Positions 3,100 to 49,331 are shown, counted from the stretch's first letter. The stretch is 64,000 bases of DNA from Mytilus californianus (GCF_021869535.1 NW_026262679.1:118048001-118112000); one strand, 5' to 3'. Numbers and translations: made by a program. The notes: generated by a model not told the origin, from the sequence alone.

Positions 3100-3940
3100 A
3101 TACAAATACCTAAATAGCTGTGTGTTAACACTCCAAGATACAAAAATCTAAATAGCTGTGTGTTAAAACTAAAAGTTACATATATCTAAATAGCTGTGTG
3201 TTAATACTCAAAGATACAAACATCTAAATAGCTGTGTGTCAATACTCCAAGATACAAATATCTAAATAGCTATGTGTTAATACTCAAAGATACAAATATC
3301 TAAATAGCTGTGTGTTAATACTCAAAGATACAAACATCTAAATAGCTGTGTGTCAATACTCCAAGATACAAATATCTAAAAAGCTGTGTGTTAATACTTA
3401 AAGATACAAATACCTAAATAGCTGTGTGCTAATACTCCAAGATACAAACATCTAAATAGCTGTGTGTCAATACTCCAAGATACAAATATCTAAATAGCTG
3501 TGTGTTAATACTCAAAGATACAAATATCTAAATAGCTGTGTGTTAATACTCAAAGATACAAATATCTAAATAGCTGTGTGCTAATACTCCAAGATAAAAA
3601 TATCTGAATAGCTGTGTGTTAATACTCAAAGATACAAATATCTAAATAGCTGTGTGTTAATACTCAAAGATACAAATACTAAATAGCTGTGTGCTAATAT
3701 TCCAAGATAAAAATATCTGAATAGCTGTGTGTTAATACTCAAAGCTACAAATATCTAAATAGCTATGTGTTAATACTGAAAGATACAAATATCTAAATAG
3801 CTGTGTGTTAATACTTAAAGATGCAAATATCTAAATAGATGTGTGTTAATACTGAAAGATACAAATATCTAAATAGCTGTGTGTTAATACTCAAAGATAC
3901 AAATATCTAAATATCGGTGTGTTAAATCAATACTCAAAGT
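3100..3940. repeat. 38-bp minisatellite, about 22 copies
   Basis: Unit atctaaatagctgtgtgttaatactcaaagatacaaat; period 38 (3301 to 3339). Confidence 0.95.
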
Positions 3941-5771: not shown

Positions 5772-6392
5772 ATGAAGCTCTCCATTGCTCTAGGTTTACT
5801 ACTGGCAGCTGTCTGCACCAATGTCACTTACGGCAAATGTTGGGGTAAAGGCTGTGGTGGATACGGTGGCGGATATGGTGGTGGATATGGAGGTGGATAT
5901 AGAGGCCTAGGTGGATGGGGCTTAGGAGGTGGATATGGAGGACGGGGCCTAGGAGGTGGATATGGAGGACGGGGCCTAGGAGGTGGATATGGAGGACGGG
6001 GCCTAGGAGGTGGATATGGAGGACGGGGCCTAGGAGGTGGATATGGAGGACGGGGTAAAGGAGGTGGATATGGAGGATGGGGCCTAGGAGGTGGATATGG
6101 AGGACGGGGCCTAGGAGGTGGATATGGAGGACGGGGCCTAGGAGGTGGATATGGAGGACGGGGCCTAGGAGGTGGATATGGAGGATGGGGTAAAGGAGGT
6201 GGATATGGAGGATGGGGTCTACGAGGCGGATATGGAGGATGGGGCCTAGGAGGTGGATATGGAGGATGGGGAAAAGGAGGTGGATATGGAGGATGGGGTC
6301 TAGGAGGTGGATACGGTGGAGGATGGGGTCTAGGAGGTGGATACAGAGGTGGATACAGAGGTGTTGTACTTAAAGGAAAAGGATCATACTAG
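5772..6392 (+). CDS. Secreted glycine-rich protein with about 14 GGGYGG[R/W]G[L/K] repeats (matrix/adhesive or antimicrobial-type)
   Basis: 206-aa ORF with hydrophobic signal peptide MKLSIALGLLLAAVCTNVTYG, a CWGKGC motif, a 27-bp coding repeat, no Asp/Glu, and a splice acceptor directly upstream. Confidence 0.92.
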   Translation: MKLSIALGLLLAAVCTNVTYGKCWGKGCGGYGGGYGGGYGGGYRGLGGWGLGGGYGGRGLGGGYGGRGLGGGYGGRGLGGGYGGRGLGGGYGGRGKGGGYGGWGLGGGYGGRGLGGGYGGRGLGGGYGGRGLGGGYGGWGKGGGYGGWGLRGGYGGWGLGGGYGGWGKGGGYGGWGLGGGYGGGWGLGGGYRGGYRGVVLKGKGSY

Positions 6393-11347: not shown

Positions 11348-11808
11348 CAACTCCAGATTGGTGTATACAGCTAAGACATTTTGGAAATTTAGAAACAAAA
11401 ATTAAAACGAGTTATTGGCTTTAAATGTATTTTGATTTGATTGAATAAGTCTTATGTAGATGAAACCTGCATTTGATGTACTAGTACTAAATTATAAGCC
11501 TGGCATCTATAGGGAATTTTTTCCCATCATACACTGCTAATTTAGGCATATTTCAATAAGTACTGACAGAAACAAATATGTAGTTTGAGATTCATATATT
11601 ATTTGCAACCATTTAACTGGTTAAGACCACTCATCCAAATGGAATGTAAATATAAACCGCCTTGGATATATTATCCTAAGTGGAATATACATTTCCTGTG
11701 CACAAAAAAAAGTATTTTAGATTTTGGGGAAGTAATGCAAAAGCAATTAATCTGTTAAAAGCCAGCATTTGTTGTTTGCAAGTTTACTGAATACCTCATT
11801 ATTTGTAA

Positions 11809-14852: not shown

Positions 14853-15085
14853 AGGTCTAGGTTGGTAAAGACTTGGTCGAGTATGGTTCAGACTAAGTCG
14901 AGCACGGTTCAAACTAGGTCGAGTATGGTTCAGACTTGGTCGAGAATGGTTGAGATTTGGTCGAGTATGGTTCAGACTAAGTCGAGTATGGTTTAGACTA
15001 GGTTCAGTATGGTTCAGACTAGGTCGAGTATAGTTCAGACTTGGTAGAGAATGGTTAAGACTTGATCGAGTATGGTTCAGACACA
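14853..15085. repeat. 21-bp minisatellite, about 11 copies
   Basis: Unit ggtcgagtatggttcagacta; degenerate copies continue to ~15230. Confidence 0.9.
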
Positions 15086-16234
15086 TATTTTAAAAATGGT
15101 TAAGCACTGGTCGAGTAAAAGTCGAATACAAATTCAGACTGTTAAGTATGGTTCAGACTACAGTCAAATAATATCGAAATTTCAGACTAAATCAGACTGG
15201 TCGAGTAAAAATCAGTACAGTCGAGTACAGAAATAGGCCATTTTAGACTTTTACTGGTTTGTAGTGAGTCCCAGTAAGGATCTCTACGTTACATTATTTT
15301 TCCGATTGGGCGTTATATTATTTATCAAATAGACATTTTGAAATAGCTAACGTTCACTTTTATCATTTAATTTCTTTTTGTTCTTTTTTGTTTCCCGAAT
15401 GTATATTTCTTTGCAAAAATCGAAATTTGTATCACCTGAAGCTGATGACAAGCTTTGTACCATTCGAACTCTCATTTTACTCATGATGTACATGTAATTT
15501 TAAGCCTCGTATCTATGATGAGTTTATTTACCTAATATCTAAATAAAAACTACAAACTTATCAAACAAAAACTGTAGTGAAAAAAAAAAGAAAAACAAGT
15601 AGTTCACAAATGCTTAAAACTCTAAAGTCTATTTTGAATATACAAACCAAGTGAACACATTTGAAATAGCAATAACGGATGTGTTGACATGGTAAGTGCC
15701 TCCTACCATACATGCGTTTTCCGCCATGCAAATGGAGACTCATTTAATTGTCATGATAGGAAAAAGTTCACAATCGGTAAATTTACAAATGAGATGACTT
15801 TTCATGTATCTCAAGATATAATATAGGGCAATATACTTTTGTTTAATTGATTCTATGTTTTTCTTGGAATCAATGTTGTTTATGTGTAATATTAAAAAAA
15901 CATATATGATTTATGGGTTCATTTAACAAACAAACCATGGCTAAGAGGGAACCAATTTGTTTATATTCCAAGCTGATTTTATCACATTTTTAAGCATCCT
16001 TGTTGATGCACGTCGATAGAACGAATATTTATATTTAGATTTCGGTACGTTGTAATAACATTTAGTTGAATGGTCGAAATACCTAGTGATATTGTTTAAA
16101 TCAAAGGTCATCATGTCCATTTAAATGATAACGAGTTTATATTTAAAACAAAACTTTCGATTTGTTAAATGCAAACCGTGAATAATTATACCGTTTGAAT
16201 ACGTGCCAAACCTTTATAAAAAAATTTGTACTAC

Positions 16235-17197: not shown

Positions 17198-18122
17198 TGT
17201 CAAAAGAGAGGCGAAGGATACCAAAGGGACATTCAAACTCGTCAGAAAATAAACTGACAATGCCATAGCTTAATAAGAAAAAGACAAACAAACAAACAAC
17301 AGTACACAAAACAACACAGAAAACCAACACGAACCCCACCAAAAACTGGCGGTGATCTAAGGTGCTCCGGAAGGGTAAGCAGATCCTGCTCCACATGTGG
17401 CACCCGTTGTTCATGCAAGTACAAACCCGGTGATATGTCTAATTCGGTAGGTCACATTCGTGGGAAGGGGACGAGATTGTAGTAACGACAATTGGAACAT
17501 ATCCGTCGTCATCTGTGAAACAGATATTCCATAACGGTCAACCAACTCGTGATGGCGTCCGTTAAATTTACGAAGGGATGATTTCAACTTCACCACTTGG
17601 AACTCTTGGTTTAATAGCTCCCTTGTGAGTAGCAACATGATAGGAAACACAAGCCCTGGAATAGCGTATCAATTGAGAGATATATACTCCGTATGAAGGC
17701 GCTACTTGGATGTTGCTACATAGAAATTGAAAGTTCACAATGGGGAAGCTGAAATCATCTCTTTTGTCGTAAAATTTTGTTTTCAACTGACCCTCATTGT
17801 CAATTTCTAGATGTAAGTCAAGATATGAGGCAGACTTAACTGTATCTATTGTATCCTTTATCTCATGTTCGATGGGATAGATGCGTTTCACATAGTCACC
17901 AAATTTTGAATTATTTAGTGAGAGAACATCATCTATATAGCGGAAAGTCAAGTTAAAGAATACTGCTTTTCTTTCTTCCTGAGACGTTTCTGTATGAAGT
18001 CAACCTCATATGAGTAAAGGAACAAGAAGAGAAGCATTAATGGGAATGCCGATTGTTTGTTGAAAAACACCTCCTCCAAACGTAACAAATATGTTGTCAA
18101 TCAAGAAATCAAGCATCTTGAT
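17198..18122 (-). mobile_element. 5'-truncated Penelope-like element, RT C-terminus and 3' UTR (Naiad-type), degenerate
   Basis: FQQTIGIP, TFRYIDDVLSLNN, YDKRDDFSFPIVNF..SNI..SYGVYISQLIRYSRAC, LRKFNGRHHELVDRYG; no endonuclease downstream of the RT. Confidence 0.85.
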
Positions 18123-18325: not shown

Positions 18326-18455
18326 TGTCAGTTTAAGAGAATTTTTTGTTTGAATCAGAGTGATTTATCCCTCCCTCAGTCAAGAAACTTGTATCTACGT
18401 CAGCCATTCTTTTTTAGATAACTCATAAGCAATTATAACTTAATTATACATCTAC

Positions 18456-18739
18456 CTCCTTTGCTTTCTTTAAAGCTGATGATGTAAATGTGGCAGCACT
18501 TTCCCCTTTAATACTCTGAAGTTCTGCAATCATACCAGATGCAGATGTATGATCATCAAGATCAAAAAGTACATAAGTATCAAAATTATATGTGATAACA
18601 CCCACTTGAAAGTCATCTTTACCAATGGGTATTCTTTTAATAAATTCAGTAATAAAACCTAGACTTCTGTTGATATTTGTTTCCAAGCTTGACGAAGTGT
18701 CAATAATGAATACGATATCTGCAGGACCAGGTCTGCAAT
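18456..18739 (-). CDS. EGF-vWA gene: vWA domain first half
   Basis: ttttgtAG acceptor; phase 1 to phase 0; DCRPGPADIVFIIDTSSSL (MIDAS DxSxS), QVGVITY, ATFTSSAL; donor GAG|GTAGAT. Confidence 0.9.
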
Positions 18740-19188
18740 CTACAAAACACATAATATACATTAGAAAAATCTGTTGTTTTTTCTTTTATAATTATCTAAT
18801 TCATCTTGGTTGTATATATATATGATGTGAATGAATCATGTACTGGATGTAAACTATCAATAGACAGACTCATTAACATTTACATTTGAGAAATAATTTT
18901 TTTTTTTGCTTGGTGTTGAAGGCCTCACTGTGACTTTGAGATAAAGAACAGCAATAAAAGCGCTGTTAATTTGCATTTTGTGTATTTCCATTGGAAAATG
19001 TTATTCAAAATCCAAATCTTAAGTCTTAATTAATTTGTATGGTTTTTTTTTTATTATAGTAGGGGATAATATGTTTTCCGATCCGTGCGTCCATTGTTAT
19101 TTCGTCAGTTCGCCCTTTCGTCAACCCTATATGTCTGGTTTAATGTAGAAACTCATCAAAGATATCAGGCTTCTAATTTTGTACGCCA

Positions 19189-20024
19189 GACTACATAAGA
19201 CTAATCAGTCTACATAAGATTAATCAGTCTACATAAGAATAATCAGACTACATAACATAAGATTAATCAGTCTACATAAGACTAATCAGTCTACATAAGA
19301 ATAATCAGACTACAATCAGTCTACATAAGAATAATCAGACTACATAACATAAGATTAATCAGTCTACATAAGATTAATCAGTCTACATAAGAATAATCAG
19401 TCTACATAAGACAAATCAGTCTACATAAGATTAATCAGTCTACATAAGATTAATCAGTCTACATAAGACTAATCAGACTACATAAGATTAATCAGTCTAC
19501 ATAAGATTAATCAGTTTACATAAGAATAATCAGTCTACATAAGAATAATCAGTCTACATCAGATTAATCAGTCTACATAAGAATAATCAGTCTACATAAT
19601 ACAAATCAGTATACATAAGACTAATCAGACTACATAAAACTAATCAGTCTACATAAGAATAATCAGACTACATAAGATTAATCAGTCTACATAAGACTAA
19701 TCAGACTACATAAGAATAATCAGTCTACATAAGATTAATCAGTCTACATAAGACTAATCAGACTACATAAGATTAATCAGTCTACATAAGACTAATCATA
19801 CTACATAATATTAATCAGTCTACATAAGACTAATCAGTCTACATAAGATTAATCAGTCTACATAAGACTAATCAGACTACATAAGATTAATCAGACTACA
19901 TAAGACTATTCAGTCTACATAAGATTAATCAGTCTACATAAGACTAATCAGACTACATAAGACTTATCAGTCTACATAAGATTAATCAGACTACATAAGA
20001 CTAATCAGACTACATAAGACTCAT
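19189..20024. repeat. 19-bp minisatellite, about 44 copies, embedded in a hammerhead-type repeat (element ~19150-20060)
   Basis: Unit tctacataagactaatcag; minus strand reads CTGATTA-GTCTTATGTAGA; flanks resemble hammerhead stem I. Confidence 0.92.
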
Positions 20025-21099
20025 GTGTGGCGATCGAATCAAAACAGATTGAAGGCTAAATGTTTATCATGACGTTGTAGTCACATAACTTTGAAACTCC
20101 TTTATCGTTTGTCTCCATTTCATGACATATGTTTATAATGATGTTAATTAATAAGAAAATAAAAGAAAGGCGAAAGATACCAAAGTGATATTCATAAATC
20201 GAACAAAATAAAATATCAATGCCATGGCAAAAGACGAAAAACCACCTAGACACAAAAATAGCAAGTAAGCGGAGAGTAACTTAAATTTGACATAATAAAA
20301 GAATAATAATTGGCAAGTTTTCCTAGACGTTTCAAATGTTTTTTCCATCCGCTTTAGTACGTTCAATTTCCTTGCATCCTTTTACAAATATTTTCATAAA
20401 TCGAACTTAAAAAATGTCAATGCCATGCCAAACAACGAATAACGACCTAGACACAAAAATGCCAAGTAAGCGGAGAGTTACTAAAATTTGACATACTGAA
20501 AGAATAATAATTGGCAAGTTTTCCAAGACGTTTCAAATGTTTTCCTATCCGCTTTAGCAGCCATTTTTAAAATAGTTTTATCATAAATAAAATAAATAAA
20601 AATAAATATCATAGTATATTAAAGTTTACTTTGAATACTATAGTGACACCTAACAATTTTACTTCATCATCACATATAATATCAATACCATTAAAAAAAT
20701 CACTAGAAAAAATGAAGAAAAGAAAAGAGAAGAGAAGAAACAAAAAGTGAGGAAGAAAAAAAAACGTCCTCAAGACAAGCAACAATACACAAAACACAAC
20801 ATAAAAAACAAAAGACTGAACAAGCCGGACCCCACAAAAAACCGAGAATGATCTCAGGTACTCTAGAAGGATAAGTAGATCCTGCTCCACATGTGGCTTA
20901 AGTCGTGTCAAATGTCAAATTCGAGTTTTGAACAAGACTTCACACTTCATTGACCATGGAAATGTGATAATGCGTGCGGGGCAGGGTGTCCGATGGGTAC
21001 ACATTCTTGTTCTTTGTTGAAATGTTTGTTTTTTTTTCAGGAAATAATAGTTGTAGTAATTTGTAAAATTTGTTTTCAATCAAATAAATCCATATTTAC

Positions 21100-21213
21100 C
21101 TGTTTGACAAACATCGCCTTTGTATCTACCTGTGCAGTCACAACTGTAGCTGTTGATTAAATTATTGCAGGATCCAGTATTCATACAGGGATTAGACTGG
21201 CATTCATCAAAAT
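21100..21213 (-). CDS. EGF-vWA gene: calcium-binding EGF exon 7
   Basis: 114 bp, phase 1-1, AG/GT; DFDECQSNPCMNTGSCNNLINSYSCDCTGRYKGDVCQT. Confidence 0.9.
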
Positions 21214-22144
21214 CTGTCATACAATAATGTGAATTGATCAATATTTCATATATAAAGTAAATATATGTAATGTATAATCATATTCAATTTGTTATGTCTT
21301 TTGTTAGGCTAGTTAATGAACGGTATCCGACAAAATGTTCCCATTTTTTTCAACGGCAAATGATTGATTGATTACAGTTCAACTTCCATTACAACTTCTA
21401 CTACCTGCATATGTAGGACGTAAGTGAGATTTTTTTTTCTTTTTTTAAATTTTAAATACATTTTATTAATTATCACCTGTTACATCAACCCTAAGTTGCC
21501 CAGGGAAGTAACTAAGGAGCCCCCGCATTTTTACAGTCTCATTTGTCGGGGAAAATGCAAATGAGGAAAAGAAACCTCCCATTATAAATAATTAACATCT
21601 ATCTTTATATATATCATCTATCTATGTATTTATCATCTATCTATATATTTATGCATCACACCATATATAATCATTTGAATAAAGTATTCATTCTATCTGT
21701 ATATTTTTTCTCACAAGAGCTACCTGTATAATATTAAGCAGTTTCAATTTTATAGCACTTCACTCCGTTCTTTGTTATGTTAATTTCTATTACATTCAAT
21801 TTCTGGTCGAGTGATCTTTTGCCACGTGCTACTCGTTAAAACATTTTGAAAGGGAATGTGTAATTCATTCATAAAAAGTAGGATTTATAATTTTGTTTCC
21901 CAAAAAAGAGTTATTTCAAAGATATGGTGAGTAAATATATGAATTTATGTGCGGTTTGCGGAATGAATTTGAAAGATTGCGCATTAATTTTATAATGGGG
22001 ATTTTGTATAAGTTGTATAACTATTGCCGTTAACCGGTTTGGCGGTCAGTATATAAGCTAATTGCACGGGTTTTTAGTTATCGAGGACTGGGTAGTGACC
22101 ACACAAACGCACGTAATATATATAGGTAGAAGTTTATATTCATC

Positions 22145-22879
22145 ATGTCCGATATTGAGCCAGACAATTTATTGAATGCTTTCAACCTGAAGTTGCTTCA
22201 CATGCTGGGGTTTCTGATGATGAGATTTCCAATGCCGATTTGCTGTCTCTGATGAAAAACTACTTTGGTAAAAAAAATGTCGGGGATCGAAAGAAATTTT
22301 GCTGACACTACACAGGATTTAGCCCGTAAAGTCAAGAAGACCGAGAATAATTTACGATACAAAGGAAATCAGGTGCAGTTTGATCTCAATTCAGACATTT
22401 TAGACAATATTAGTGGCGCTTTAGACAACTTGCATCATAAGAGATATTCCAAGGCCGTTTCTTTATTGGAGGAGTCGAAAAAGGTGCTTAAGAAGAGAAA
22501 CAAATTGATTCGTATAGCGGACAAGTCAGAGGCAGGGTGGAAAACCGTTGACAAATATCTTTCTGATGAGGTAGCTATCAATTCAGAAGACGAGAAGAAG
22601 ATACGAGCTGCAGAGACCAGAGCCGTGGAGAAGATGAAAGTAACAAAGGGTAGTAACAGGAGTGAAAAGAAAAGACCCGCTGAAGCTGCAGGTGGTCCGT
22701 CTTCAGTCGCTCGTGGAGCTGGTGGTGTTGCAGTTGTTTCACAGCCGCCCATTCGTGTTGACGGGGCATCGGGCCCTAATCCAAGATTCATCAGATCAAA
22801 AGCCAGAGACATCTGCTACAAGTGTGGGTTGTATGGGCATTGGGCCAAAGAATGCAAGAACGGAGGGAATAGTAACTAA
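22145..22879 (+). pseudogene. DIRS gag-like ORF with CCHC knuckle, frameshifted near the 5' end
   Basis: KRNKLIRIADKSEAGWKTV..SEDEKKIRAAE and CYKCGLYGHWAKEC; ATG at 22145 is out of frame with the main ORF. Confidence 0.85.
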
Positions 22880-24850
22880 AAAGCTCCCAGAGGATCTTCT
22901 GCATAAAAGAAATTCGGACATTTTACAAGTACAAAGCTTAGAAAATTTTCAAACTTATTTTGAATATGAATCCGGTTCATCTTTGATTAATGTACATAAT
23001 AGACTGAAGCATTCTATTTCTTTTTGGAAAAGCATCAATTTTATTCTAGATGTAATTAATTCTGGTTACAAAATTCCTTTTATCAATGAACCTGAAAGTG
23101 TATTTTTGAAAAACAATAAATCTGCATTTGATAATTCAGATTTTGAAGGGAAGGCTATACAGGATTTGTTAGATGCTAATTTGATCAGAGAGGAGTGGAA
23201 CGCACCTTTTGTTGTAAATCCTTTAACGGTATCTATAAGTCAATCAGGTAATTGTCGTTTGAATTTAGATTTACGACATGTAAACAAACAGGTACGTTAT
23301 TTTAAGGTTAAATTCGAGGACTGGAAAACAGCTAGTCAGTTTTTAACTTCAAATTATTTTGGGTTTGTTTTTTATCTTAAATCTGGTTATCATCATATAG
23401 ATATTTTTCCTAATCATCAAAAATATCTGGGATTTTCCAGGAAGTGTGGTTATCCTGTGAAATTTTATGTTTTCACTGTTTAGCCATTTGGGCTTTCATC
23501 AGCAGGGTATATTGTTACAAAGGTAGTTCGTCCTTTGGTAAAACATTGGCGGAAAGACGGGATTAAGATAACTGTTTATTTAGATGATGGTTTGGCGTTA
23601 GCAGATGATGAACAGGTATGTGCCCAACAAGCTATACTGGTGAAAGAGGACTTGATTTTGTCGGGATTTGTACCCAATAAAGATAAGTGTATTTGGAGGC
23701 CTGTACAGAATTTAGTTTGGCTTGGATTTATATGGGATTTAAAGCATTGTCTTTTTCAATTGCTTCCAGAGAAAGTGGCATATTTGATAGATTTAACAGG
23801 AGTCATTTTAGACGAGCCTCACAGAGTGAAAATAAGACTGCTTGCGAAATTTTGTGGTAAAATAATTTCTTTTATCCCGGTTATTGGAAATGTCACTCAG
23901 ATAATGACCAGATGCACTTTTCAGTGATTAACAGTAGAGATGAGTGGGATCAATTTGTAGATTTGAATTTTTATTCAGGTTCTATACGAGAGATTTTATT
24001 TTGGAGGCAAAATATTATAAGTTTAAAGCCTGTGGCAATCTTGAGAGAAAACTCAGATTTTAAAGTGTTCACTGACGCCAGTGATGGTTCAGCCGCAGGT
24101 TTTGTAGCTAATTCTGATTATATCATGCATAAGCAGTGGTTGCAGCATGAAGCTATAAAAAGTTCCACTTGGAGAGAATTGAAAGCTGTTGAACTGTCTA
24201 TAGATAGCCTTAAACATTTACTATCGAATAGTTTAGTTTCGTTTTTCACAGATAACCAAAATGCTGTTGGTATTATTCAGAAAGGTAGCAAAGTACCAGA
24301 ATTGCAAACGTTGGCTTTGTCAATATTTAGTATTTGTGGTTCTTTTAATATTTCTTTATATCCACAATGGATCCCGAGAGAAGATAACGAAAAAGCAGAT
24401 GGATTGAGTAGGATCGTCGATATTGGACGATTGGGGGTGTTTCGTTTGAATTTTTCAACTTCATAGATAGATTATGGGGTCTTCATACAGTTGATAGATT
24501 TGCAAATATGAACAATGCGAAACTCGGGAGATTTAATTCTTCCTTTTGGAATCCGAGTACGAGTGCAATTGATGCCTTTACTTGTAATTGGAATGGGGAT
24601 AATAATTGGTTAATCTTGTTAGCAAATGCATCAATCATTTAGTTAACTGCAAGGCAGTAGGAACATTAATCGTCTGCGTTTTGGCCACTTTTATTTAAGG
24701 AGAATTTAGAATATGTTTGGTTTGTCAGAGATGTTTTAGAATTTCATGAGATTGATAGAATCTTAGTTGCAGGCTATAATAAGAATTCTATTTTCGCTAA
24801 TGGGACATTTAACGGGCTGTTATTAGCTGTTCGTTTGGATGCTTCTCAGA
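22662..24850 (+). pseudogene. DIRS pol: reverse transcriptase, RNase H and adenine-methyltransferase-like domain
   Basis: DLRHVN, LKSGYHHI, TV*PFGL (TAG at 23481-83), VYLDDG, FTDAS, WRELKAV, TDNQN, WIPREDNEKADGLSR, HTVDRFA..NNW; frameshifts near 23925 and 24425. Confidence 0.9.
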
Positions 24851-25134
24851 TGCATTAATATGCTGTTTGTTATTTACAGATTGTGGATAAAGATGTTTTA
24901 CCACTGGGTGTTTTTTTATGTACTGATTACGCTGGACTGCCTTGAAGGTTGCTGGACCGTGAATGTGTTTAGAGGTCACTGGACCATATGTTTTAGTGTC
25001 ACTGGACGTTAATCTTATAAGATGTTTTACGTATTTGCATTGTATAATGTTGGTCACTGGACTATATAGAAATCATAACAATATGTATTGATAATACTAT
25101 AGATTTGTTATTTGAAGTGTTTATTTATTTACAG

Positions 25135-26125
25135 AAAATATTTTCTACTGGATTCTGGTCCGAAAACGAAAAAGTGGCACATCCAGAGCTCCGTCTGCTT
25201 TTACATAATTTGCCAACAACGGTAACCGATGCTAGAGCTCAATCTACAGTAGACAAATATAGTGGTGGTTTTAAGATTTGCCAAATTGACAGAAAAGTAT
25301 CGTGAAATAACTTGTATTTAACCATGCAAAGAAATTTATGTTGGTCTTTATCTGCAAAATTTAAAAGAATCTGCAAAACATTTTAACATAAACTGAGTCT
25401 GCATTTCAAAGTATCAGATGGGCACACAATTTAGCTGGTGTAAAAAATCCTTGCGATTCAGATTTAATTTCTTCAATAGTTGAGTCAGCAAGGAAAACAC
25501 TTTCTAGACCTATCAAGAAAAAGGAACCTGTGACACCTGATATTATGATTAAATTGTTTGCTAAATATAATACTTTCAATAGAACACTCAAAGATTTACG
25601 TTTACTTACTATCTGTTCTTTAGCTTATACAGGTTTTTTACGCTATAATGAATTATGTAACATTAAAGCCAAACACATAAGTTTTTGTGATGGTTATATA
25701 GGTATTTTTGTTGAAAGGAGCAAAACGGATTGCTATAGAAAAGGCAACCATGTTTTCATATCAAAGCTAGAAAGTCCACAATGTCCTGTTGCTTTACTTT
25801 CAAATTATTTAGATGTAGCCAATATAGATATGAAGTCTGATATGTATATTTTCAGATCGATCTTGTTTTTTTAGAGTCGCAATTCATTTTCATTAAGAAA
25901 GAAAAATGTCTAGAACAAGAGAAATATTCTCTTCGGCATTAGCTGAATTTGGCTGTAATATAACTGATTTTGGTTTACATAGCTTTAGAGCTGGAGGGGC
26001 AACAGCTTCCGCTCAGAATGATATATCTGATAGATGGTCGCTGGAAATCAGATAGAGCCAAAGACGGATATGTGTTAGAAAATTTACAGAAGCGTTTATC
26101 AGTTTCTAAGAATCTTGGAATTTAG
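25135..26125 (+). pseudogene. DIRS tyrosine recombinase, frameshifted
   Basis: ARAQSTVDKY, GFLRYNE, SKTD, CPV, LHSFRAGGAT, WKS..KDGYV; ends LGI-TAG. Confidence 0.9.
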
Positions 26126-26539: not shown

Positions 26540-29046
26540 TCTCACACATAGTTGAAAAGGCTTCATTGTTCGTAGTTTGTTTAAGAGATTTGAACAAAAA
26601 TTCCATTTCATGTTTCATCATATTCAAAATCCTCGATTTAGTTATCCCTTTCTTTTGATATTTTGCAATGTTTCTAGTTTTCCAAATAATTCATTTCATG
26701 ATAAGAAGCACCGTATCTAGAATTTTAAAATAAGATGTATCTGCATTTATGACACCCAAAATGATACTCATTTCCGATGTTTGTAATTTTCCGATACTCA
26801 ATTTTGAACAAAATTCCTATATTTTCTCAAAAATTTCCAGTATATAAAAAGATGAAAAAGTGGTTGTTTTTCATTACAAAAGTGACACTTTCCGTTTGAG
26901 CGATTCATTTTTTGTATTTTTTCTTCCGTGTAAATTATATTATGAAGTAACTTCCATTGAAGTTGTTTACTTTCCTGTTAGCTAAATTCTTATTTGAATT
27001 GTCCCAAATATCTCCCCATGGTAGTTCCTTCCTTAAATGTAAATTCCACTTAAACTGACTTTTTCATAAAAGTATCGAATATCTTTAAGGCACAATTTTT
27101 TGGCATCAACGACAACTCCATTTTTTCTAAATTGACAAGAATTTATTATTTCCATAGGTCTATCAGAAAGACTTTGCACGTTAGTGTCGGTTTTTAAAAT
27201 GTCTATTTGTTCATGCGTTAATGAAGCTTTAATGCGGCTATATTGTGCTATCCAGTTTCTTTTATCTTTTAGCTTGTTAAAAATTTCGAGAGAAGTTTTA
27301 AAGGATTTATTATTTAGGTCCCATATATCTTTTTTTTTATTCCACTGGAGGCAAAATGTGCATAGTATAAAGCATGAACATGAATTTACAATTGCCCAAT
27401 ATATTTTCTTCTATAAGGTCCTCTTTCGTGACGGATTTTTGAGTTTTCTGCAAGTCAGTCCAAGAAGTCAAAAGTTTTTTTATAATATTTAGACATTTTT
27501 ATTTGCCCAAAACCTCAAGTGTCCGAACAAGAACAAATAACAAATTCTGTATCATATTTTTCGTCTAGTGACGTTAACCAGTATTTACCTATTGTATTCC
27601 ATTTATGTGTTTTCGAGTTTACAATACTGTACATACTTTTCACCTGTTTTGATTTTTTAAAGTCCCTTAAGTTTATCATTCTTCCCTTTTTCTTTCGGTA
27701 AACAGCACACTGTCCTTGCGATTTGGGTTGTTTTCCCATCCCAAATAAAGGACCATATAGTAGTATTTATTTGTTTTTCGTATATATCTGGAATACATCT
27801 CATTTCAATTTCGTATCCGATCATAGACAGTACAAATGATTTAATAATTAAAACTTTTCCCGTAAATGTGAGATCTCTTGATTTCCAAACCTCCATACAG
27901 CTTTTTATTTTATTTATTTTTTTCTAACCAAATTTGATCTAAGTCCACTCCATATCCGTGTTGAACTCCTAATGCTTTCACAGGCCGCTTAGACCATCTA
28001 ATTTGGTTAAATTTTGGTTTTTTATTTCGCCACCTGCCTAAATACATACCCACAGTCTTTTCCATATTCATTCTTGCGCCTGAAGCGTTTTCGTACAGTT
28101 TTAAAGTTTTAAATGTTTCTTCGATAGACTCCTCATTTTTATTAAAGAGTTCAGTATCGCCAGCAAACATATTTAGCTTTGTTTCAATATAGTCCCCGGT
28201 TCTAGTTGGAAGTTTTATTCCTTCGATATTCGGATTGTTTTTAATTGATGCTGCAAGTGGTTCTGTCTGCAAAATATATAACATGGGTGCGATTGGGTAT
28301 CCTTGACGAATTGAACGAGTTATGCTTACAAATCTAGAAGTAAACCCATAAGTTTGAATACACGTCTTAGCGTTAATGAAAAGCATTTTTACCCAACTCT
28401 TGAATTTTTCCCCAAACCCAAAATTTAATAAACAAAAATCTATCCATTCCCACTCCGCCCTATCAAATAGTTGGTCCAAGAATAAGATCACACCCTCCTC
28501 ATTTTCTAATTCGCAAAAATCTATTATATCTTGCAGTAATATATTGCCTTGAAAAATGTTGCGCCCTTTGACAAAACGTTTTTGATCCAAATCAATTATT
28601 TGCGGAAGAACGCTTTTTAACCTTTCCGCAAGTACTTTAGATATGATTGTATAGTCTGTGTTCAAGAGAGTTATAGGACGCCAATTTTTTATGTCCTCTC
28701 TCTCCCCAGATTTAAACATAAGCGTTATCATTCCTCTGTATTGAGATTCACAGATCAAAATTTTGTCGAAAATTTCCTTAATAACCGCCACGAAGTCGTT
28801 GCTTATCAAATACCAATACGTTTTATAGAATTCATTCACAATTTCGTCTTCGCCGGGGGATTTATCAAGTTTCAACATTTTAACGGCCTTACTAATTTCA
28901 TCAAAAGTTATTTCCATTTCACACATTTTTTTATTTTCTTCACTTAGTTCATGATCTAGATTCTGTAATAGATTTTCTGCAGTTAGTGAGATATTAATAA
29001 AACACGGTGTATCCGTAAACAACACCCTTTGTCGGAATGTTGACAT
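26540..29046 (-). mobile_element. 5'-truncated Tx1/L1-type LINE ORF2 (RT + C-terminal CCHC), degenerate
   Basis: KSPGED..NEFYKTYW, WRPITLLNTDY, RQGYP, FAGDT in place of the [Y/F]ADD motif, and C-terminal KCHFCNEKQPLFHLF; frameshifted. Confidence 0.88.
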
Positions 29047-29109
29047 GCTAAATCACAAAGTAACTTTCCTCAGGAAGGCACATCACCCAACATTAATAAA
29101 TTTGACTCG

Positions 29110-29262: not shown

Positions 29263-32054
29263 GATGAGTATATTTATTTACCATAGAGACAATCAGTAAG
29301 AAAGATCAAATCTTTTTACACTGATTTCAAAATATTAGTATTTGCGAAGGATTCTCCTTTTAATTTCTTTGATTTTTACTTCCATTACCCATTACCAAGA
29401 AACCCGGACCTATCATGAAATTGTCTACACATAAAGATCTTTCACTTTTTGATTAGTATTCCGTTTTCAAGGCAATTACATGACATCACAGAGTCAAAAT
29501 AAAATGTTGTCACAAAATTATTTCAGTGAAAACCTTGTCAAATGAGTTTTAAAGCCAAGTGGAAAGCGGTGAAAATTAGCAATTTGACCTTTGACTGATA
29601 ATATGGATTTTAACTTGTTCTAAAATTAATTGTCTGGCAAATCTTACTTAAGATTAAATATATGCTTGGACTAATATTAAGATTTACACAGAAAAATGTA
29701 TTTAAAGGAAAATGCTGGTGAAATGTTTTAACTTAAGATTTTGAGGTGCTTGGGCTACGTGGTAACATTTGCTAAGTTACTTGGAAACATATTAAAGCAG
29801 AAATGTGAAATAATAAATGGGAACACCTATCGGTCACCTTTTTCGTTCTTTACTTTTAAAATTCTATATTGTTTAGTTTATGGATTCAATATTTCTGGAA
29901 TTTTTATTTCATTATATTAATCATATTAAGACGTTTGAATCAAAACGTTGTAACCACAAACTAAGTAACATAATATAATCTTAAAATTAAAAGTTTTTCA
30001 AATCATATCAATTGAAGCAAAAGGTCGAAATACTTGCTTTCAATATTATAGTTTCTTCAATTAATGCTAATATCACTTGCATTAGACATTTTGAAATGTT
30101 TTGCACATTGGAGTTATTTATTATTATTGGTCTTCACTGTACTTAAACCCTGCATTTTATCACCGTGTAAAATTCCGTTTCATGATATTGGTTTGTCAGA
30201 AATGATGGACCTGGTCTTAATTACTCTTACCTGGACTATAACCGACGTTTTAATATTTGACCCAACGTTGATAACCACACAAATGTCGGTTATTAGATTG
30301 TTCTTATTTACATATATTTTAAAATGCAACTACTCGAGGCTATAGGAAGCATTTTTCAAATCTCACTAGCATGTAGCTCATTTTTTAATTATATTTTAAA
30401 TCTGAAAAAAACGTGCTAAGAATTTTATTTTTTTTAATAGATTTTTACAGACCAAAGCTTAATACACAGTACGATTTATGTTAAAAAAATATTTACTATA
30501 TTCATATAATCATCTTTGATTTGTAAAAACAAACTTTAGCTTTTGGATGCTAGCGAAATCATTTTAATTCAGGATTTTTCAGATGCCTTCTTTGTATTTG
30601 TGTATACGTGCATGACTTATCAAAGATATATCAAGATCTACGCAAGAAAGCGATGCTGTTTCGACTTAAGCAAACCACGCCATTGCACGGTTTTATAGAA
30701 AACTGATTCTATTCAAATAATATAGAATTAGCGTAAATGACAGGGTTTTTTAATCATGTAGTTGCGGTCCCCTTAGGCAAAGTTGACCTAGAAATTTTTA
30801 GGTATGCTGTAAAAGTTCTTCAAGCTTTTATACTCTCAAGCGTAGTAGAATTTTTGGCTATCAAAAAGTATTCCACTGCAATGTGGAAAACGGTAACAAT
30901 CTTTTTCTTTATAATTTTTTGAAACTCAAAATGAGTTTTAGTTTTTGATACGTAAATGTTAAGATTAAAATAAAAAGTAAGAAACGTTGTCTTTTTATAT
31001 TTGTTTGAAGTGTTTTGAAAGGTATTAATTGAAAAGTTTTTAAAAAATTGTACACTACGGTTATATTCACTTTTAAAATTATTGTGTATTTCATCAGATA
31101 TTCAAACCTTCCTATAATAACAAAACCTTGGATATAGCGCTTTAGGATTACGTCGTTTGCGGCTATGTTTGGGCACTTTGTTTTAAAAAGAAAGTTTTAA
31201 TTTGAGAATGAAAAACCCAATCTGAAAATGATGGAAGAAAATTATATGTTATCAAAATGAATGATGTGTTGTAATGTTTGCTGTTGCTGTTCGTACGGAT
31301 ATTTTCAAGAACAAACTTTATTCCAGAAATCATGTATTGTAAATTATGGCGACTGTAGTTTATCGATGTTCAACTCCAGTGAATCGACTAGGAAGAGACA
31401 AATCAAAGTAACAAGCAAAAACAGGTATTTTAAAGCAGTTACAGAAAAATCTTTATGTGTTTTGTGTACTGCTTTTTGTCTATTCGTCGTCTTTTGTTTC
31501 TTTGCCATGACATTATCATTTTGTTTTCGACTGATGAGTCAAAATATCCCTTTGGTATCTTACGCCTCACTTTTAATTTCTTAAAGAAAAATCCAATTTT
31601 TTACTACAGCAAATAACGAAAAGCGTAATACACAGTATGGCATGAGCAAATCGTAAATACGTTCTTTTGGCAAAAAGGAGCGTTTTGGTTGTTTTAATTG
31701 TTGATTTGTTTAAGATTTAAATAATACTATATTTGCTTATATTCAAATAGAAGCTTGTCTTATTCGAACTGAAGAATTTTTTTACAGAAAAAGAACTTAC
31801 TTGAATTTTGGAGACTGGCAGGCGACAACAGTATACCAAAAAACGTTTAACGACGAATGCGGATAACACAATTTTCAGAATCATTCGAGACTTCATAAAT
31901 AACAAGATCATACTCTTGATTGTGAATGATCATGTAGTATCAATTCAGTCAGAAAATATGATCAGTAGATGCATAAATAAAAATTTATCTCTTATATTAT
32001 ATTCATAAACAACTGTGATAATATCAAAACAAAATCGGGGTAATTATAAGATAC

Positions 32055-33619: not shown

Positions 33620-33870
33620 TGGGACACATATATTCCATAACGATAATTTAAACACGATGGAGTCCGTTAAACTTTCGAAGGGATGACTTTAAGAAGATCA
33701 CCCCCAGTTTTTGGTGGGGTTCGTGTTGCTCAGTCTTTACTTTTCTTTGTTGTGTTTTGTGTACTGTTATTTGTCTGTTTGTCTTTTTCTTTTTTAGCCA
33801 TGGCGTTGTCAGTTTATTTTCGACTTATGAGTTTGAATGTCCATTTGGTATCTTTCGCCTCTCTTTAACT
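33620..33870 (+). mobile_element. PLE 3'-UTR-derived repeat; related copies at ~20750-20905, 31440-31585 and 38540-38700
   Basis: gatcacccccagtttttggtggggttcgtgttgctc...ggtatctttcgcctctc is the reverse complement of 17198-17360. Confidence 0.75.
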
Positions 33871-34277
33871 TTACCACTTTGAATCCTCAATTTCAAAAAG
33901 CTTCCTTGTAAGCAGTGATCCGCTATGATTGGACACGCAAAAACTGATATTTCGCAGGCGCTGCAGGAATGTTGCTGCATATAAATGGAAAGCTCACGAT
34001 TGGGAAGCTTTTAACCCAAGGATCCCTTGTTGTAAACTTCTAGTCGAAATTGGATATGATGAAATACTACAGAAAAAGATTACAGAGTTGAATAGTGATC
34101 CAACTTCGCAATCCATACTAAAGAGATGCACTGTGCATCTCCGTCTGATGAGTTTGTCTTTATGTATATAATAATGCGTAACGTAAATAAGTTCGCAAAT
34201 GTGTTTCTCCAGACTTCACTAGAACATATTGAAAAAAATCAAGCTTTCATTACCTTATGATTTATAATAACAGATAC

Positions 34278-39445: not shown

Positions 39446-39490
39446 TGCGTCCGAAGCGCTTTTCTGGATTCACCTTCATCAGGAACGCTC
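39446..39490 (-). ncRNA. Minimal type-I hammerhead ribozyme motif with intact core
   Basis: Minus strand gcgttc-CTGATGA-aggtgaatcca-GAAA-AGCGCTT-C-ggacgc; stem I gcgttc/ggacgc, palindromic stem III AAGCGCTT, UUC site. Confidence 0.75.
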
Positions 39491-39808
39491 AAAACCGAAT
39501 AGTTGAAAGCCAAAATGAACCGAAACAATTTATGAGCTATATGACCAAAAAGGACATAAAATAATAGCCAAATCCATCTCAGGTCAACTTTGTCTGTGGT
39601 CGTTGAAATCTTGGTAAACTTGTTGTTGGCTATTACCTTCATCTTTTTTCAAATAATCGATTGCAACATTCATTGTTGTTTTTTGTTCTTTGTTGAGTAA
39701 TTCATATATAAAGCATTATATTTGTAGCCCATATGATGCTCGATGACTAAATTAATATTTCATGAGAACTCTTTAATTCATATTTATTTATATGTTAAGT
39801 ATCTTTAC

Positions 39809-46871: not shown

Positions 46872-48199
46872 CGAGCCAGCTTCGATCCTTGCTTCGATGT
46901 TTGCATTATCCTATTTTCTATATGTTGTTTCTCAGTAAATTGTGTACCTTCTTCGATTTTTTTTTTATTAAAGATACATTGTCATCATATGGTTGCCTCA
47001 AGATATCAAACTCAAAAGAGTCTACTAAGGTATAGAAATATGGTCACATGGACTTTTTCTTTCCGGTAGAAAAATCATTTTTTAAATAGGGGCGTTCGTT
47101 TAGCTCTGTTGGGTGTATCAATGCGTTGCTACTTAAAAATCGATCTCGTGTTATTATTGTATCACACGCTGATTCAAATGTTGATAAAAACGAGGACAGC
47201 CACCTAAAGAAATGTGGCAGAGGTGAACATGCTTGTGAACGCTCAACCTTGTCCTAACCTGGGACAGTGGTGTACCATCCCAACATTAGAACAAACTGTA
47301 GAAATGGACCGGAATATGTGAATGTGATATGATATGAACATTGTTTTGCACAAGACCGACACGCTTACATTAGAATAAGACATTTTCCAAAACATGGGGG
47401 AGAGGATGTAAGGTTCTCAAGAAGGGTTAGCAGATCCTGGTCCACATGTACCACTCGTCGTGTTACTTTCTCTAAAAATCCGTGTTAAAGACTTATCAAG
47501 ACCTTAGTGATTAGACATCATGGAATAGTGGGTTGGTATTTGTTTTTTTCTAACCAAAAGACACCACCAAATTCGTGATCCATCGGTCATGTAAATTTTC
47601 TACCCCACTAAAGGCGTTTTTGACTTTTTTTGGTCCCAATCCCTGTTTGCGCATCGGCATTTTACTTTTATTATAAGACTGGCACGGTTGGGGCTATAAA
47701 TAAAATAGGAATTTACAGGGGTGGAACGTTAGCATTTCTACAGGACTACCTTGAAGTTTTGATTTAGCATTTTTGAGAAAACGGTCGTTATTTCAGATGT
47801 CGCAAATATATCTAACTATGTATATGTATGATACAATAGTAAAACAAAACATTTTCCGGAAAGGGATTTGCAAATGAATGTTAACACTATTTGACAAACC
47901 TTAAATAATATTCCCATACACTGGATAATTAACATCATACATTACACCAGGTTAACACTTAAAATGTTTTGAAGTCGTCTAATAGATAAAAAAAACAGTG
48001 TTAGAATTAAAATGTGTGTATGTATTTAAAAGGATCGAAAGAAACAGAAAAAAAATGTTTATCAAAGAAAAATTGTAAGCAATCGTCTTTATCTATTTAT
48101 CTACGTAGTGTAAAGGTAATGCAAGATCAACACTAACTTTCTGTGTAATAAGGTACATTTTGTAGTTATAATTTCAGATTTTGAATAATAAATTTTACT

Positions 48200-48243
48200 G
48201 CACCAGATGCGCATTTCCACAGTTAATATCTCTTCAGTGATGC
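48200..48243 (-). ncRNA. Degenerate hammerhead of another family; a more decayed relic lies at ~46392-46430
   Basis: Minus strand gcatca-CTGAAGA-gat..gtg-GAAA-tgcgca-TC-tggtgc; the stem II closing pair is lost. Confidence 0.6.
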
Positions 48244-49331
48244 TCGAGGCCAAAATATTTCAAAACCAAAAACCTAATACATGGTGCGGTTTGTGTTGTT
48301 CAGTCTATCATAATAGTTTTCTATGTAGTATATGTGTAGACAGTTTATAGTCTCGGCCTTTCTCGATTTTTGCCATGGTGTTGCCTGTTTCTCTCGACTT
48401 ACTTTTTTTAAGCTGTACATGTATATGTTAATCAACTTTATGGACCTCATCAAAGGTTTTGCTTAAGACAGCGAAATACCCTCGAGTTCGGTATTTTACA
48501 TTTTCGTTTACAGGGTGTTGTCTTCATACACCACTATGCTTCTGATATTTTATAGTTCGATCTTAGACCTAAAAACAATTTTTGATAGGCAAGCAAACCA
48601 TTCGTATTGAAGTCCGAATCTTTTGAAAAGAGTCTAACATATATCTAACAGTTGATTGCATGTTCCCTTTCAATAATGTTGGTATAAATCTGACATAGTC
48701 GTGTCAGTCAAATGCAAAAACAGGATATACTAACGCGAAAGTGCTTCATCGTGTATTGAAATTACATGCAATTTTTTGTTGTTGAGACGTGAGTCATTAA
48801 GGGATATATCTCATACAAAACTTTTAACAGTAGAAGAGTCATAATTGTACATTTTATTTTAATATTAATGATTAGGGCAGAAGGGAGTCAATATTTGAGC
48901 TAGGTTACAGATTACATTCCACTTGTAGAAACTAAAGTTTAGAATAAACCTAAAACATGAAAGAGCAGGTCTTACAAGGAAGAAAAACGTTGTTATCTTC
49001 GATCGTAATATTGCTATTTAAAATGATGCATGATAATTAAGTATGGTACAAAATACGGGTACATTTTAATTAACTTACTTAATTTGCACGATGATTTGAA
49101 TCCGAGGAAGAGTTGAATTTCTGCAGATGATGAAAAAAGAAACCCTCAAATTTATATTATTTGTTTATCTAGCAACAAACCGTACCAACCAGGTAAATTT
49201 CTTTTCATGTTCATTGAGCGTATATACATATAAACAAATCGATACAACTGTCATATTATGTCTATTTACATTTTTTTGAGGTCATTAACCTACCTTTTAA
49301 ATATATAAATATGTAAATGTGAATAAAAGTA

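What the first reader, a model, noticed from the sequence alone, without database searches (positions are those of the whole stretch)
19150..20060. Minisatellite born inside a hammerhead ribozyme: about 44 copies of the CUGAU(U)A-stem II module
On the minus strand the array starts gatCGCCA-cacATGA-GTCTTATGTAG, repeats CTGATTA-GTCT-TATGT-AGA(C) as a 19-mer for ~835 bp, and ends gtcTGGCGtac. CGCCA/TGGCG (+ strand 20028-32 and 19184-88) is a 5-bp stem I that still closes the whole array. The unit is a hammerhead CUGAUGA core with one change plus a GTCT/AGAC stem II, while the GAAA-stem III half is missing. The flanks parallel the hammerhead at 48200-48243 (gcaccaga...ctcttcagtgatgctcga versus acgccaga...ctcatgtgtggcgatcga). 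This suggests slippage or template switching at the ribozyme core seeded a satellite. The array is in sense orientation in an intron of the EGF-vWA gene, so the pre-mRNA would carry a poly-half-ribozyme (inference).
Basis: partly seen in the sequence, partly recalled or inferred. Interest (0 to 1): 0.8.

Follow-up and report, generated by a model that had tools for sequence, protein, structure and literature searches.

The report
Minisatellite grown from a dead hammerhead ribozyme
A 19-base stretch of a self-cutting RNA motif (hammerhead ribozyme) carried by a common mussel jumping element has been copied about 44 times in a row inside a gene's intron, destroying the ribozyme; it shows neatly how a minisatellite is born, but nothing shows a function.

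Summary
I first took the motif match for chance: Rfam finds no hammerhead in the window, and 13% of random 19-mers carry a CUGANGA-like heptamer. Related loci reversed that view.

The array's two flanks are the two halves of one copy of the Mytilus type I hammerhead retrozyme. A cloned member of that published family self-cleaves in vitro.

The 19-nt unit equals the CUGAUGA box plus stem II. Every internal unit lacks G at the catalytic G8 position (U in 41 of 43). The edge unit keeps G8. Twelve bases, GAC-GAAAC-GCGC, are missing.

The orthologous M. edulis intron holds the same insertion, decayed, with no array. The expansion therefore happened in genomic DNA after insertion. A 38-bp higher-order pattern and a segmental duplication inside the array fit this.

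The result is a dead ribozyme and most likely a neutral minisatellite. The scan noted a similar case on other DNA of this genome (s1-282020, a 56-base dead-hammerhead unit repeated ten times).

The parts
20033..20060 (-). Body of a 5'-truncated solo retrozyme copy upstream of its hammerhead (element positions about 126-153)
   Evidence: nhmmer with the family profile: window 20060->20010 = positions 126-177, E 5.2e-4; pairwise alignment to the consensus
20028..20032 (-). Stem I 5' arm, CGCCA (family: CGUCA)
   Evidence: Family alignments; stem I pairs are kept in 94% of cells across 12 natural copies
20009..20027 (-). Edge unit CACATGA-GTCT-TATGT-AGT. The original core box is damaged at U4 and G5 but still has G at the G8 position
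   Evidence: Array parse; alignment to the consensus
19192..20008 (-). Internal units of the 19-nt minisatellite (43 units, the last 17 nt long) = hammerhead C3 to A9 plus stem II and its loop (element positions 160-178). None has G at G8: 41 of 43 read U, two read A
   Evidence: TRF; 19-mer search; unit census; parse and lag identities; nhmmer unit hits at positions 159/161-179
19189..19191 (-). GUC, the remnant of the cleavage-site triplet. Just 5' of it, 12 nt (GAC-GAAAC-GCGC: end of stem II, the GAAA box and most of stem III) are missing
   Evidence: Alignment to the consensus shows a 12-nt gap; family alignment
19184..19188 (-). Stem I 3' arm, TGGCG
19145..19183 (-). Retrozyme tail downstream of the hammerhead (element positions about 197-235)
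   Evidence: nhmmer: window 19209->19145 = positions 159-235, E 1.9e-10; 84% identical to M. edulis L001 10529-10572
48189..48271 (-). Another copy of the same retrozyme family. It has CUGAAGA, GAAA, stem I and stem III with compensatory changes, and a decayed stem II.
   Evidence: nhmmer E 7.9e-5, positions 126-208; alignment A4 and pair counts; no hammerhead match in Rfam at E<=10
11415..11522 (+). Another decayed copy of the family (element positions 127-234)
   Evidence: nhmmer E 7.1e-9
21083..21277 (-). Open frame holding the EGF exon of the host gene, upstream of the intron
   Evidence: Pfam PF00008, E 1.2e-6
18447..18785 (-). Open frame holding the first VWA exon of the host gene, downstream of the intron
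   Evidence: Pfam PF00092, E 3e-16, profile positions 1-90 of 174

Best explanation
A 5'-truncated solo copy of the Mytilus non-LTR retrozyme inserted, in sense orientation, into the EGF-VWA intron. This abundant non-coding retroelement carries a type I hammerhead. The insertion predates the split between the window's lineage and M. edulis.

Later, in genomic DNA of the window's lineage, the 19 nt from C3 of the CUGAUGA box to the third base of the stem II 3' arm (element positions 160-178) were duplicated in tandem. An AC dinucleotide bounds the segment on both sides. The most likely cause is replication slippage helped by the stem II hairpin (inferred). Slippage and unequal exchange then expanded the segment to about 44 copies (inferred from array signatures).

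A variant with U at the G8 position was homogenised through the array. Twelve bases, GAC-GAAAC-GCGC, were lost at the 3' junction, where a GTCTG microhomology exists.

What remains is the two stem I arms and the GUC triplet, 835 nt apart, with no GAAA box, no stem III, and no G at G8 in any internal unit. This is a dead ribozyme. The array is most likely a neutral intronic minisatellite carried in the pre-mRNA.
For: Shown:
- Intact relatives read GAGCGTCA-CTGATGA-GTCT-TATGT-AGAC-GAAAC-GCGC-GTC-TGGCGTAC. They match Rfam RF00163 over positions 1-45 of 45 at 33.0, 30.3 and 26.2 bits, with E from 2.6e-5 to 4.4e-3.
- The family profile places the two flanks at element positions 126-177 and 159-235, overlapping exactly on the repeated unit. 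Alignment to the consensus shows the 12-nt gap.
- The hammerhead pairing holds in 92.8% of cells across 12 natural copies, against 20-48% when partners are slid. Four pairs show compensatory changes.
- The family is the one cloned from M. galloprovincialis, with the same body and hammerhead. That clone self-cleaves in vitro and gives abundant circular RNA (PMC7229834).
- M. edulis locus L001 is collinear with the window across seven EGF exons and the VWA exons. Its intron holds the same element at the same place, with no array.
- Sequence outside the element aligns on both sides: z 4.0 (0 of 1000 shuffles) and z 3.3 (12 of 1000). Six non-orthologous copies give z of 1.3 or less.
- The edge unit keeps G8 and no internal unit does. 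Lag-38 identity (0.928) exceeds lag-19 identity (0.892) in the 5' half. Units 36 and 41 share a rare 24-nt variant, which marks a segmental duplication of about 92 nt.
Against: - Rfam finds no hammerhead in the window itself. Membership therefore rests on homology to relatives.
- A CUGANGA-like heptamer followed by a 4-bp hairpin occurs in 0.4% of random 19-mers. The motif alone would not have been evidence.
- Orthology of the insertion rests on modest flank alignments at about 75% identity. The family is dense here, about one fragment per 5-10 kb, so an independent insertion into the same intron is not excluded.
- L001 could be a close paralogue rather than the orthologue.
- The slippage step and its timing are inferred.
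Confidence: 0.85

Rival explanations
1. Chance resemblance: an ordinary intronic minisatellite whose unit happens to look like a hammerhead core plus a hairpin, with no descent from a ribozyme. This was my own first reading.
For: No hammerhead match in Rfam in the window, even at E<=10. 13% of random 19-mers carry the heptamer with up to one mismatch, and 0.4% also have a 4-bp hairpin. Thirteen such modules occur elsewhere in the window. Stem positions vary without compensation.
Against: Both flanks are homologous to the retrozyme on either side of its hammerhead, in the right order and orientation, and overlap on exactly the unit. The edge unit keeps ATGA. GTC-TGGCG follows the array, as it does in intact copies.
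Confidence: 0.03
2. The repeats were made at the RNA or reverse-transcription stage. The reverse transcriptase switched template or slipped at the ribozyme core during retrotransposition, so the copy arrived already multimeric. The M. edulis copy later collapsed.
For: The M. edulis orthologue carries a 9-nt tandem duplication [TGATTCTTA][TGGGTCTTA] in the same hammerhead segment. This could be a remnant of an early repeat. Retrozymes are thought to be copied from circular RNA (PMC7229834).
Against: The M. edulis duplication has a different unit and phase (9 nt against 19 nt). Copying around an RNA circle gives whole-unit repeats of about 365 nt, not 19-nt repeats; L005 1005-1489 is such a 1.3-mer. 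The higher-order 38-bp pattern and the internal segmental duplication are signatures of DNA-level exchange. None of about 18 other copies in the fetched loci has a 19-nt repeat.
Confidence: 0.08
3. The array is a selected RNA element. It could be a 'poly-half-ribozyme' that works with a GAAA-NUH strand in trans. It could be a fold-back intronic RNA giving small RNAs or sequestering retrozyme RNA. It could be a splicing modulator.
For: It lies in sense orientation in an intron. The array RNA is predicted to fold back strongly: 76% paired, with four units giving z -2.4 against shuffles. The G8U change makes the unit junction a perfect 14-nt G.U-tolerant palindrome, with a self-duplex of -18.2 against -15.0 kcal/mol.
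Against: No internal unit has G at G8. G8 is part of the invariant catalytic core, and its 2'-OH matters for catalysis (PMC11300833 abstract; established knowledge). There is no GAAA box, and G12 is the general base (PMC2553840). Units vary freely at stem positions. The array is absent from the M. edulis orthologue. No expression data could be obtained.
Confidence: 0.04

Closest known systems
Mytilus non-LTR retrozymes with type I hammerheads (Cervera and de la Pena 2020, PMC7229834)
   Same: Same sequence family. The cloned M. galloprovincialis retrozyme in that paper's supplement has the same body and the same hammerhead, GAGCGTCA-CTGATGA-GTCTTTTGTAGAC-GAAAC-GCGC-GTC|TGGCGTA. The paper reports about 5,000 copies and units of 350-390 bp. 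A 1.3-mer with about 365-bp spacing is seen in L005.
   Different: The window holds only a 5'-truncated solo fragment. Its hammerhead is disrupted by a 19-nt x 44 internal expansion and a 12-nt deletion, so it cannot cleave or give circular RNA.
Hammerhead-bearing satellite DNAs (newt satellite 2, Schistosoma Sm-alpha, cave-cricket pDo500), now viewed as retrozyme arrays
   Same: Tandem DNA associated with a type I hammerhead. The Rfam RF00163 consensus GACGAAACGCGCGUC is shared with the parent family.
   Different: In those satellites the repeat unit is the whole 150-450-bp element with a complete ribozyme in each unit (PMC7229834; the named examples are from my own knowledge). Here the unit is a 19-nt sub-fragment of the ribozyme, and no unit is complete.
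Tandem repeats born from internal segments of transposable elements (reviews PMC6947457 and PMC12628747; bivalve examples PMC3879986 and PMC7492417)
   Same: The same general process: a short piece of a dispersed element is duplicated locally and then expanded by slippage and unequal exchange.
   Different: The described bivalve cases are central arrays of MITEs or Helentron-type DNA elements that move with the element. This one is a single-locus expansion after insertion in a retroelement, and its seed is a catalytic RNA motif.
   Same: A decayed retrozyme whose ribozyme segment became the unit of a local tandem array.
   Different: Different locus, unit length (56 against 19 nt) and copy number. 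I did not check that note.

Membership tests
Hammerhead ribozyme, type I (Rfam RF00163) | Conserved CUGANGA box (C3 to A9) | tested here: not met
   Internal units read CUGAUUA, with no G at G8. The edge unit reads CACAUGA, with U4 and G5 changed. Intact relatives have CUGAUGA.
Hammerhead ribozyme, type I (Rfam RF00163) | GAAA box (G12 to A15.1) after stem II | tested here: not met
   The 12 nt GAC-GAAAC-GCGC are absent from the window copy. No CTGANGA + stem II + GAAA occurs anywhere in the window.
Hammerhead ribozyme, type I (Rfam RF00163) | Stems I, II and III around the core, with an NUH cleavage site | tested here: inconclusive
   The stem I arms CGCCA/UGGCG and the GUC triplet are present but 835 nt apart. 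Stem II is complete in 9 of 39 units. Stem III is lost. In the family the fold holds in 92.8% of cells, with 4 covarying pairs.
Hammerhead ribozyme, type I (Rfam RF00163) | Score at or above the curated covariance-model threshold (34 bits) | tested here: not met
   The window has no hammerhead match at E<=10. Relatives score 33.0, 30.3 and 26.2 bits, full length, just under the threshold.
Hammerhead ribozyme, type I (Rfam RF00163) | Self-cleavage | not testable with these tools
   Shown in vitro for a cloned M. galloprovincialis member of the family, k_obs about 0.1 per min (PMC7229834). Not expected for the window copy.
Mytilus non-LTR retrozyme (PMC7229834) | Sequence homology to the described retrozyme unit | tested here: met
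   nhmmer E 5.2e-4 for the 5' flank and E 1.9e-10 for the 3' flank. The profile consensus reads like the cloned sequence in the paper's supplement (compared by eye).
Mytilus non-LTR retrozyme (PMC7229834) | Tandem units of about 350-390 bp, each with a hammerhead | tested here: not met
   The window copy is a solo fragment covering element positions 126-235. A relative, L005 1005-1489, shows a 1.3-mer with about 365-bp spacing.
Mytilus non-LTR retrozyme (PMC7229834) | Expression as circular RNA | not testable with these tools
Minisatellite (tandem array, unit about 10-100 bp) | Head-to-tail copies of a short unit, far beyond chance | tested here: met
   Period 19, 43.8 copies, score 1181. 40 matches against 0.03 expected.
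Minisatellite (tandem array, unit about 10-100 bp) | Length polymorphism between individuals | not testable with these tools

The most novel reading that the evidence does not exclude
The hammerhead core and stem II segment of mussel retrozymes may be a recurrent, structure-driven seed of minisatellites. Its hairpin and its quasi-palindromic junction would favour slippage, and the G8-to-U change makes that junction perfectly self-complementary. The resulting sense-strand intronic arrays would fold into long duplex-like RNAs that feed small-RNA pathways against the very abundant retrozyme RNAs.

Hints only: a 9-nt duplication in the same segment of the M. edulis orthologue, a TGA duplication in the core of L001 23526-23577, the 56-nt array in note s1-282020, and the strong predicted fold-back of the array.
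Probability: 0.07. Interest if true: 0.6.

Novelty: new variant of a known kind. Interest (0 to 1): 0.4.

Why it matters
This is an unusually legible case of minisatellite birth. The parent sequence is an experimentally characterised ribozyme, and the exact 19 nt that were copied can be named. The bounding microhomology, the unexpanded orthologous state, and the later homogenisation and deletion steps can all be read from sequence.

It also shows one way abundant retrozyme copies die inside genes. It warns that motif-level 'ribozyme' signals in mussel repeats may be fossils. It does not reveal a new mechanism or a function. Whole-element hammerhead satellites and tandem repeats derived from transposable elements are both already known.

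Tried and rejected
- Rfam at gathering and permissive thresholds on the window, the array region, the 48200 region and the M. edulis intron. No hammerhead was found. This misled me at first. The window copy is too disrupted to score, and intact relatives score just under the threshold.
- BLAST of the flanks against the window. It found no link to 48200. Only a family profile (nhmmer) shows the link.
- Chance statistics for the motif. The motif alone is weak evidence. That is correct, but homology superseded it.
- A 9/10-nt sub-period of the unit. Lag-9 and lag-10 identity is only about 0.42, so I dropped the idea.
- My first alignment of M. edulis treated the locus as an 'empty site with one proto-unit'. 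I re-read it as a decayed copy of the same element once the family consensus was known.
- Strict local alignment of the flanks outside the element was not significant. Scoring suited to about 75% identity, with controls, was significant.
- Metagenome scan for the tandem 19-mer gave 0 hits. The control scan with the intact hammerhead consensus found only 2 contigs. That collection therefore holds almost no mussel DNA, and the blank is uninformative.
- The scan's notes searched by sequence gave a blank, which means nothing.
- The 'stem I closes the array' fold is seen in one context only and is not robust.
- L002, L003 and L004 do not cover the array site or lack the element in that intron.
- Host-gene exons were searched one at a time by reference.

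Full report
**Observation**

The array is real. Tandem Repeats Finder gives 19187-20021, period 19, 43.8 copies, 86% matches. The 19-mer with up to three mismatches occurs 40 times, all inside the array on the minus strand, against 0.03 expected.

Read on the minus strand, the region runs as follows:
- CGCCA at 20032-20028.
- An edge unit CACATGA-GTCT-TATGT-AGT at 20027-20009.
- Internal units CTGATTA-NTCT-TATGT-AGN from 20008.
- A last unit of 17 nt at 19208-19192.
- GTC at 19191-19189 and TGGCG at 19188-19184.

Of 39 in-register units, only 9 form the full GTCT/AGAC stem. Unit positions 8 and 19 vary without compensation.

**Host gene**

The host gene lies on the minus strand. An EGF exon sits in the frame 21083-21277 (PF00008, E 1.2e-6). 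The first half of a VWA domain sits in 18447-18785 (PF00092, E 3e-16). More EGF exons lie upstream, out to about 37 kb.

**My first reading, and why it was wrong**

Rfam finds no family at gathering score in the window. It finds no hammerhead at E<=10 around the array or around 48200, and none at E<=5 in the whole window.

Random 19-mers of this base composition carry a CUGANGA-like heptamer with up to one mismatch in 13% of cases. In 0.4% of cases a 4-bp hairpin follows it. Thirteen such modules occur elsewhere in the window. Nowhere in the window is there CTGANGA + stem II + GAAA. BLAST showed no similarity between the flanks and the 48200 region. On this evidence I held the hammerhead reading to be a chance resemblance.

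**The reversal**

To see the same intron elsewhere, I searched the VWA exon product and fetched the encoding contigs. A paralogous M. trossulus region (L005) unexpectedly held three matches to the array's immediate 3' flank.

Aligned, these copies read GAGCGTCA-CTGATGA-GTCT-TATGT-AGAC-GAAAC-GCGC-GTC-TGGCGTAC. Rfam's type I hammerhead model matches them over its full length, positions 1-45 of 45. The scores are 33.0, 30.3 and 26.2 bits (gathering score 34), with E from 2.6e-5 to 4.4e-3.

**The family**

BLAST and a profile built from six copies define a dispersed element of about 236 nt. It has about 18 copies in the window and the fetched loci.

The profile places the parts of the window as follows:

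| Window (strand) | Element positions | E-value |
|---|---|---|
| 20060->20010 (-) | 126-177 | 5.2e-4 |
| 19209->19145 (-) | 159-235 | 1.9e-10 |
| array units (-) | about 160-178 | weak single-unit hits, E 0.2-0.9 |
| 48271->48189 (-) | 126-208 | 7.9e-5 |
| 11415-11522 (+) | 127-234 | 7.1e-9 |

In the consensus, CTGATGA is 160-166, GTCT 167-170, TATGT 171-175, AGAC 176-179 and GAAA 180-183. C-GCGC-G follows at 184-189, TC at 190-191, and TGGCG at 192-196.

On 12 natural copies the canonical pairing holds in 92.8% of cells, against 20-48% when partners are slid. Four pairs show changes on both sides, and the covariation score is reached by 1 of 500 shuffles. The 48200 copy contributes G-C to A-U in stem I and C-G to U-A in stem III.

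The supplement of PMC7229834 gives the cloned M. galloprovincialis retrozyme, and it is this family: same body, same hammerhead, cleavage after GTC. The paper reports about 5,000 copies, units of 350-390 bp, self-cleavage in vitro and abundant circular RNA. L005 1005-1489 is a 1.3-mer with about 365-bp spacing.

**Anatomy of the window copy against the consensus**

- The 5' flank carries the element body, the stem I 5' arm (CGCCA for CGUCA) and a damaged first core.
- The repeated unit is element positions 160-178, that is C3 to A9 plus stem II and its loop.
- The base after the unit is C, as is the unit's first base. An A precedes both, giving AC/AC microhomology.
- No internal unit has G at the G8 position (41 of 43 read U, two read A). 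Only the edge unit keeps ATGA.
- At the 3' junction, 12 nt (GAC-GAAAC-GCGC) are missing, and GTC-TGGCG and the element tail follow.
- Units ending in AGT share GTCTG with that junction.

G8 and G12 belong to the invariant catalytic core (PMC11300833 and PMC2553840; established knowledge). No unit, nor the whole, can therefore be an active hammerhead.

**When and how**

M. edulis locus L001 is collinear with the window across seven EGF exons and the VWA exons, at 69-86% identity. Its EGF-VWA intron is about 900 bp, against about 2,040 bp in the window.

That intron holds the same element at the same place (L001 10499-10569 = positions 163-234, E 2.4e-6). The copy is decayed and has no array:
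- It keeps remnants of the GAAAC-GCGC-GTC half.
- It lacks element positions about 126-162.
- It has its own 9-nt tandem duplication, [TGATTCTTA][TGGGTCTTA], in the same segment.

Sequence outside the element aligns on both sides. The 5' side gives z 4.0, with 0 of 1000 shuffles reaching the score, and the alignment ends at the element boundary. The 3' side gives z 3.3, with 12 of 1000. Six non-orthologous copies give z of 1.3 or less. A stricter scoring had not been significant.

This points to one ancestral insertion, followed by expansion in DNA in the window's lineage. Two features of the array point to unequal exchange:
- In the first 400 nt, lag-38 identity (0.928) exceeds lag-19 identity (0.892).
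- Units 36 and 41 share a rare 24-nt variant, which marks a segmental duplication of about 92 nt.

The initial slippage step is inferred.

**RNA properties**

The array is predicted to fold back on itself. Four units give z -2.4 against shuffles, and 76% of a 901-nt transcript is paired. In that 901-nt context, CGCCA/UGGCG pairs with probability 0.80-0.98. With 150 or 300 nt more on each side the probability falls to 0.003. 'Stem I still closes the array' is therefore true by descent but not shown physically.

The G8-to-U change turns the unit junction AGAC-UGAUUA-GUCU into a perfect 14-nt G.U-tolerant palindrome. Its self-duplex energy is -18.2 kcal/mol, against -15.0 for the ancestral form. 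This may have favoured hairpin-mediated slippage, but that is speculation.

**Comparison and novelty**

Whole-element hammerhead satellites and retrozymes are known (PMC7229834; bioRxiv 10.64898/2026.07.22.740005). Conversion of transposable-element pieces into tandem repeats is also known, including in bivalves. A keyword search found no report of a minisatellite whose unit is a sub-fragment of a ribozyme core.

The scan itself noted a related case on other DNA of this genome: s1-282020, a 56-base dead-hammerhead unit repeated ten times. I did not test that note. Earlier notes also name the genome as a California mussel, which I did not verify.

**What could not be done**

- A metagenome scan for the tandem 19-mer was blank. 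The control with the intact hammerhead consensus found only two contigs, so that blank is uninformative.
- The notes searched by sequence were blank, which means nothing.

**Verdict**

The array is a minisatellite born inside the hammerhead of a solo retrozyme copy. It most likely arose by ordinary DNA-level slippage and unequal exchange after insertion, and it left a dead ribozyme. It is a new variant of a known kind and of moderate interest.

Noticed in passing
window 11415-11522 (+), 15494-15529 (+), 39476-39614 (-), 48189-48271 (-): Further decayed fragments of the same hammerhead retrozyme family, about one per 10 kb of this window. The family is equally dense in the M. edulis and M. trossulus loci.
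   Followed up: partly
L005 16961-17196 and 17785-18020; L005 1005-1489: In M. trossulus, two full copies lie 824 bp apart and are 96.6% identical over 175 bp, each with an intact hammerhead. This looks like a dimer with a long spacer. A 1.3-mer with about 365-bp spacing also occurs, which fits the published retrozyme unit size.
   Followed up: partly
L001 23526-23577 (-) and L001 10491-10508 (+): Small tandem duplications in the same hammerhead segment of other copies: CTGA-TGA-TGA-G inside the core box, and [TGATTCTTA][TGGGTCTTA] in the M. edulis orthologue. These hint that the segment is slippage-prone.
   Followed up: no
window 20188-20357 and 20390-20557; 20153-20260: The same intron holds a 170-bp direct repeat (88% identical). 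It also holds a dispersed repeat with copies at 17202-17282, 31473-31583, 33784-33872 and 38538-38637.
   Followed up: no
window 22256-25871 (+) and 27913-29052 (-): Long open frames of retroelements lie in the next intron upstream. They account for much of the window gene being about twice as long as its M. edulis counterpart.
   Followed up: no
window 3100-3925, 5913-6343, 14869-15082, 50241-50936, 62070-62270: Several other tandem arrays (units of 38, 27, 21, 192 and 27 bp). Minisatellites are very frequent in this window, so some overlap with retrozyme fragments is expected by chance.
   Followed up: no
L002 1493-2357: A more distant homologue of the gene, from ENA assembly ERZ6864376, has an EGF-VWA intron of 864 bp with no retrozyme copy. 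It carries family fragments in the next intron instead (3379-3601, minus strand).
   Followed up: no
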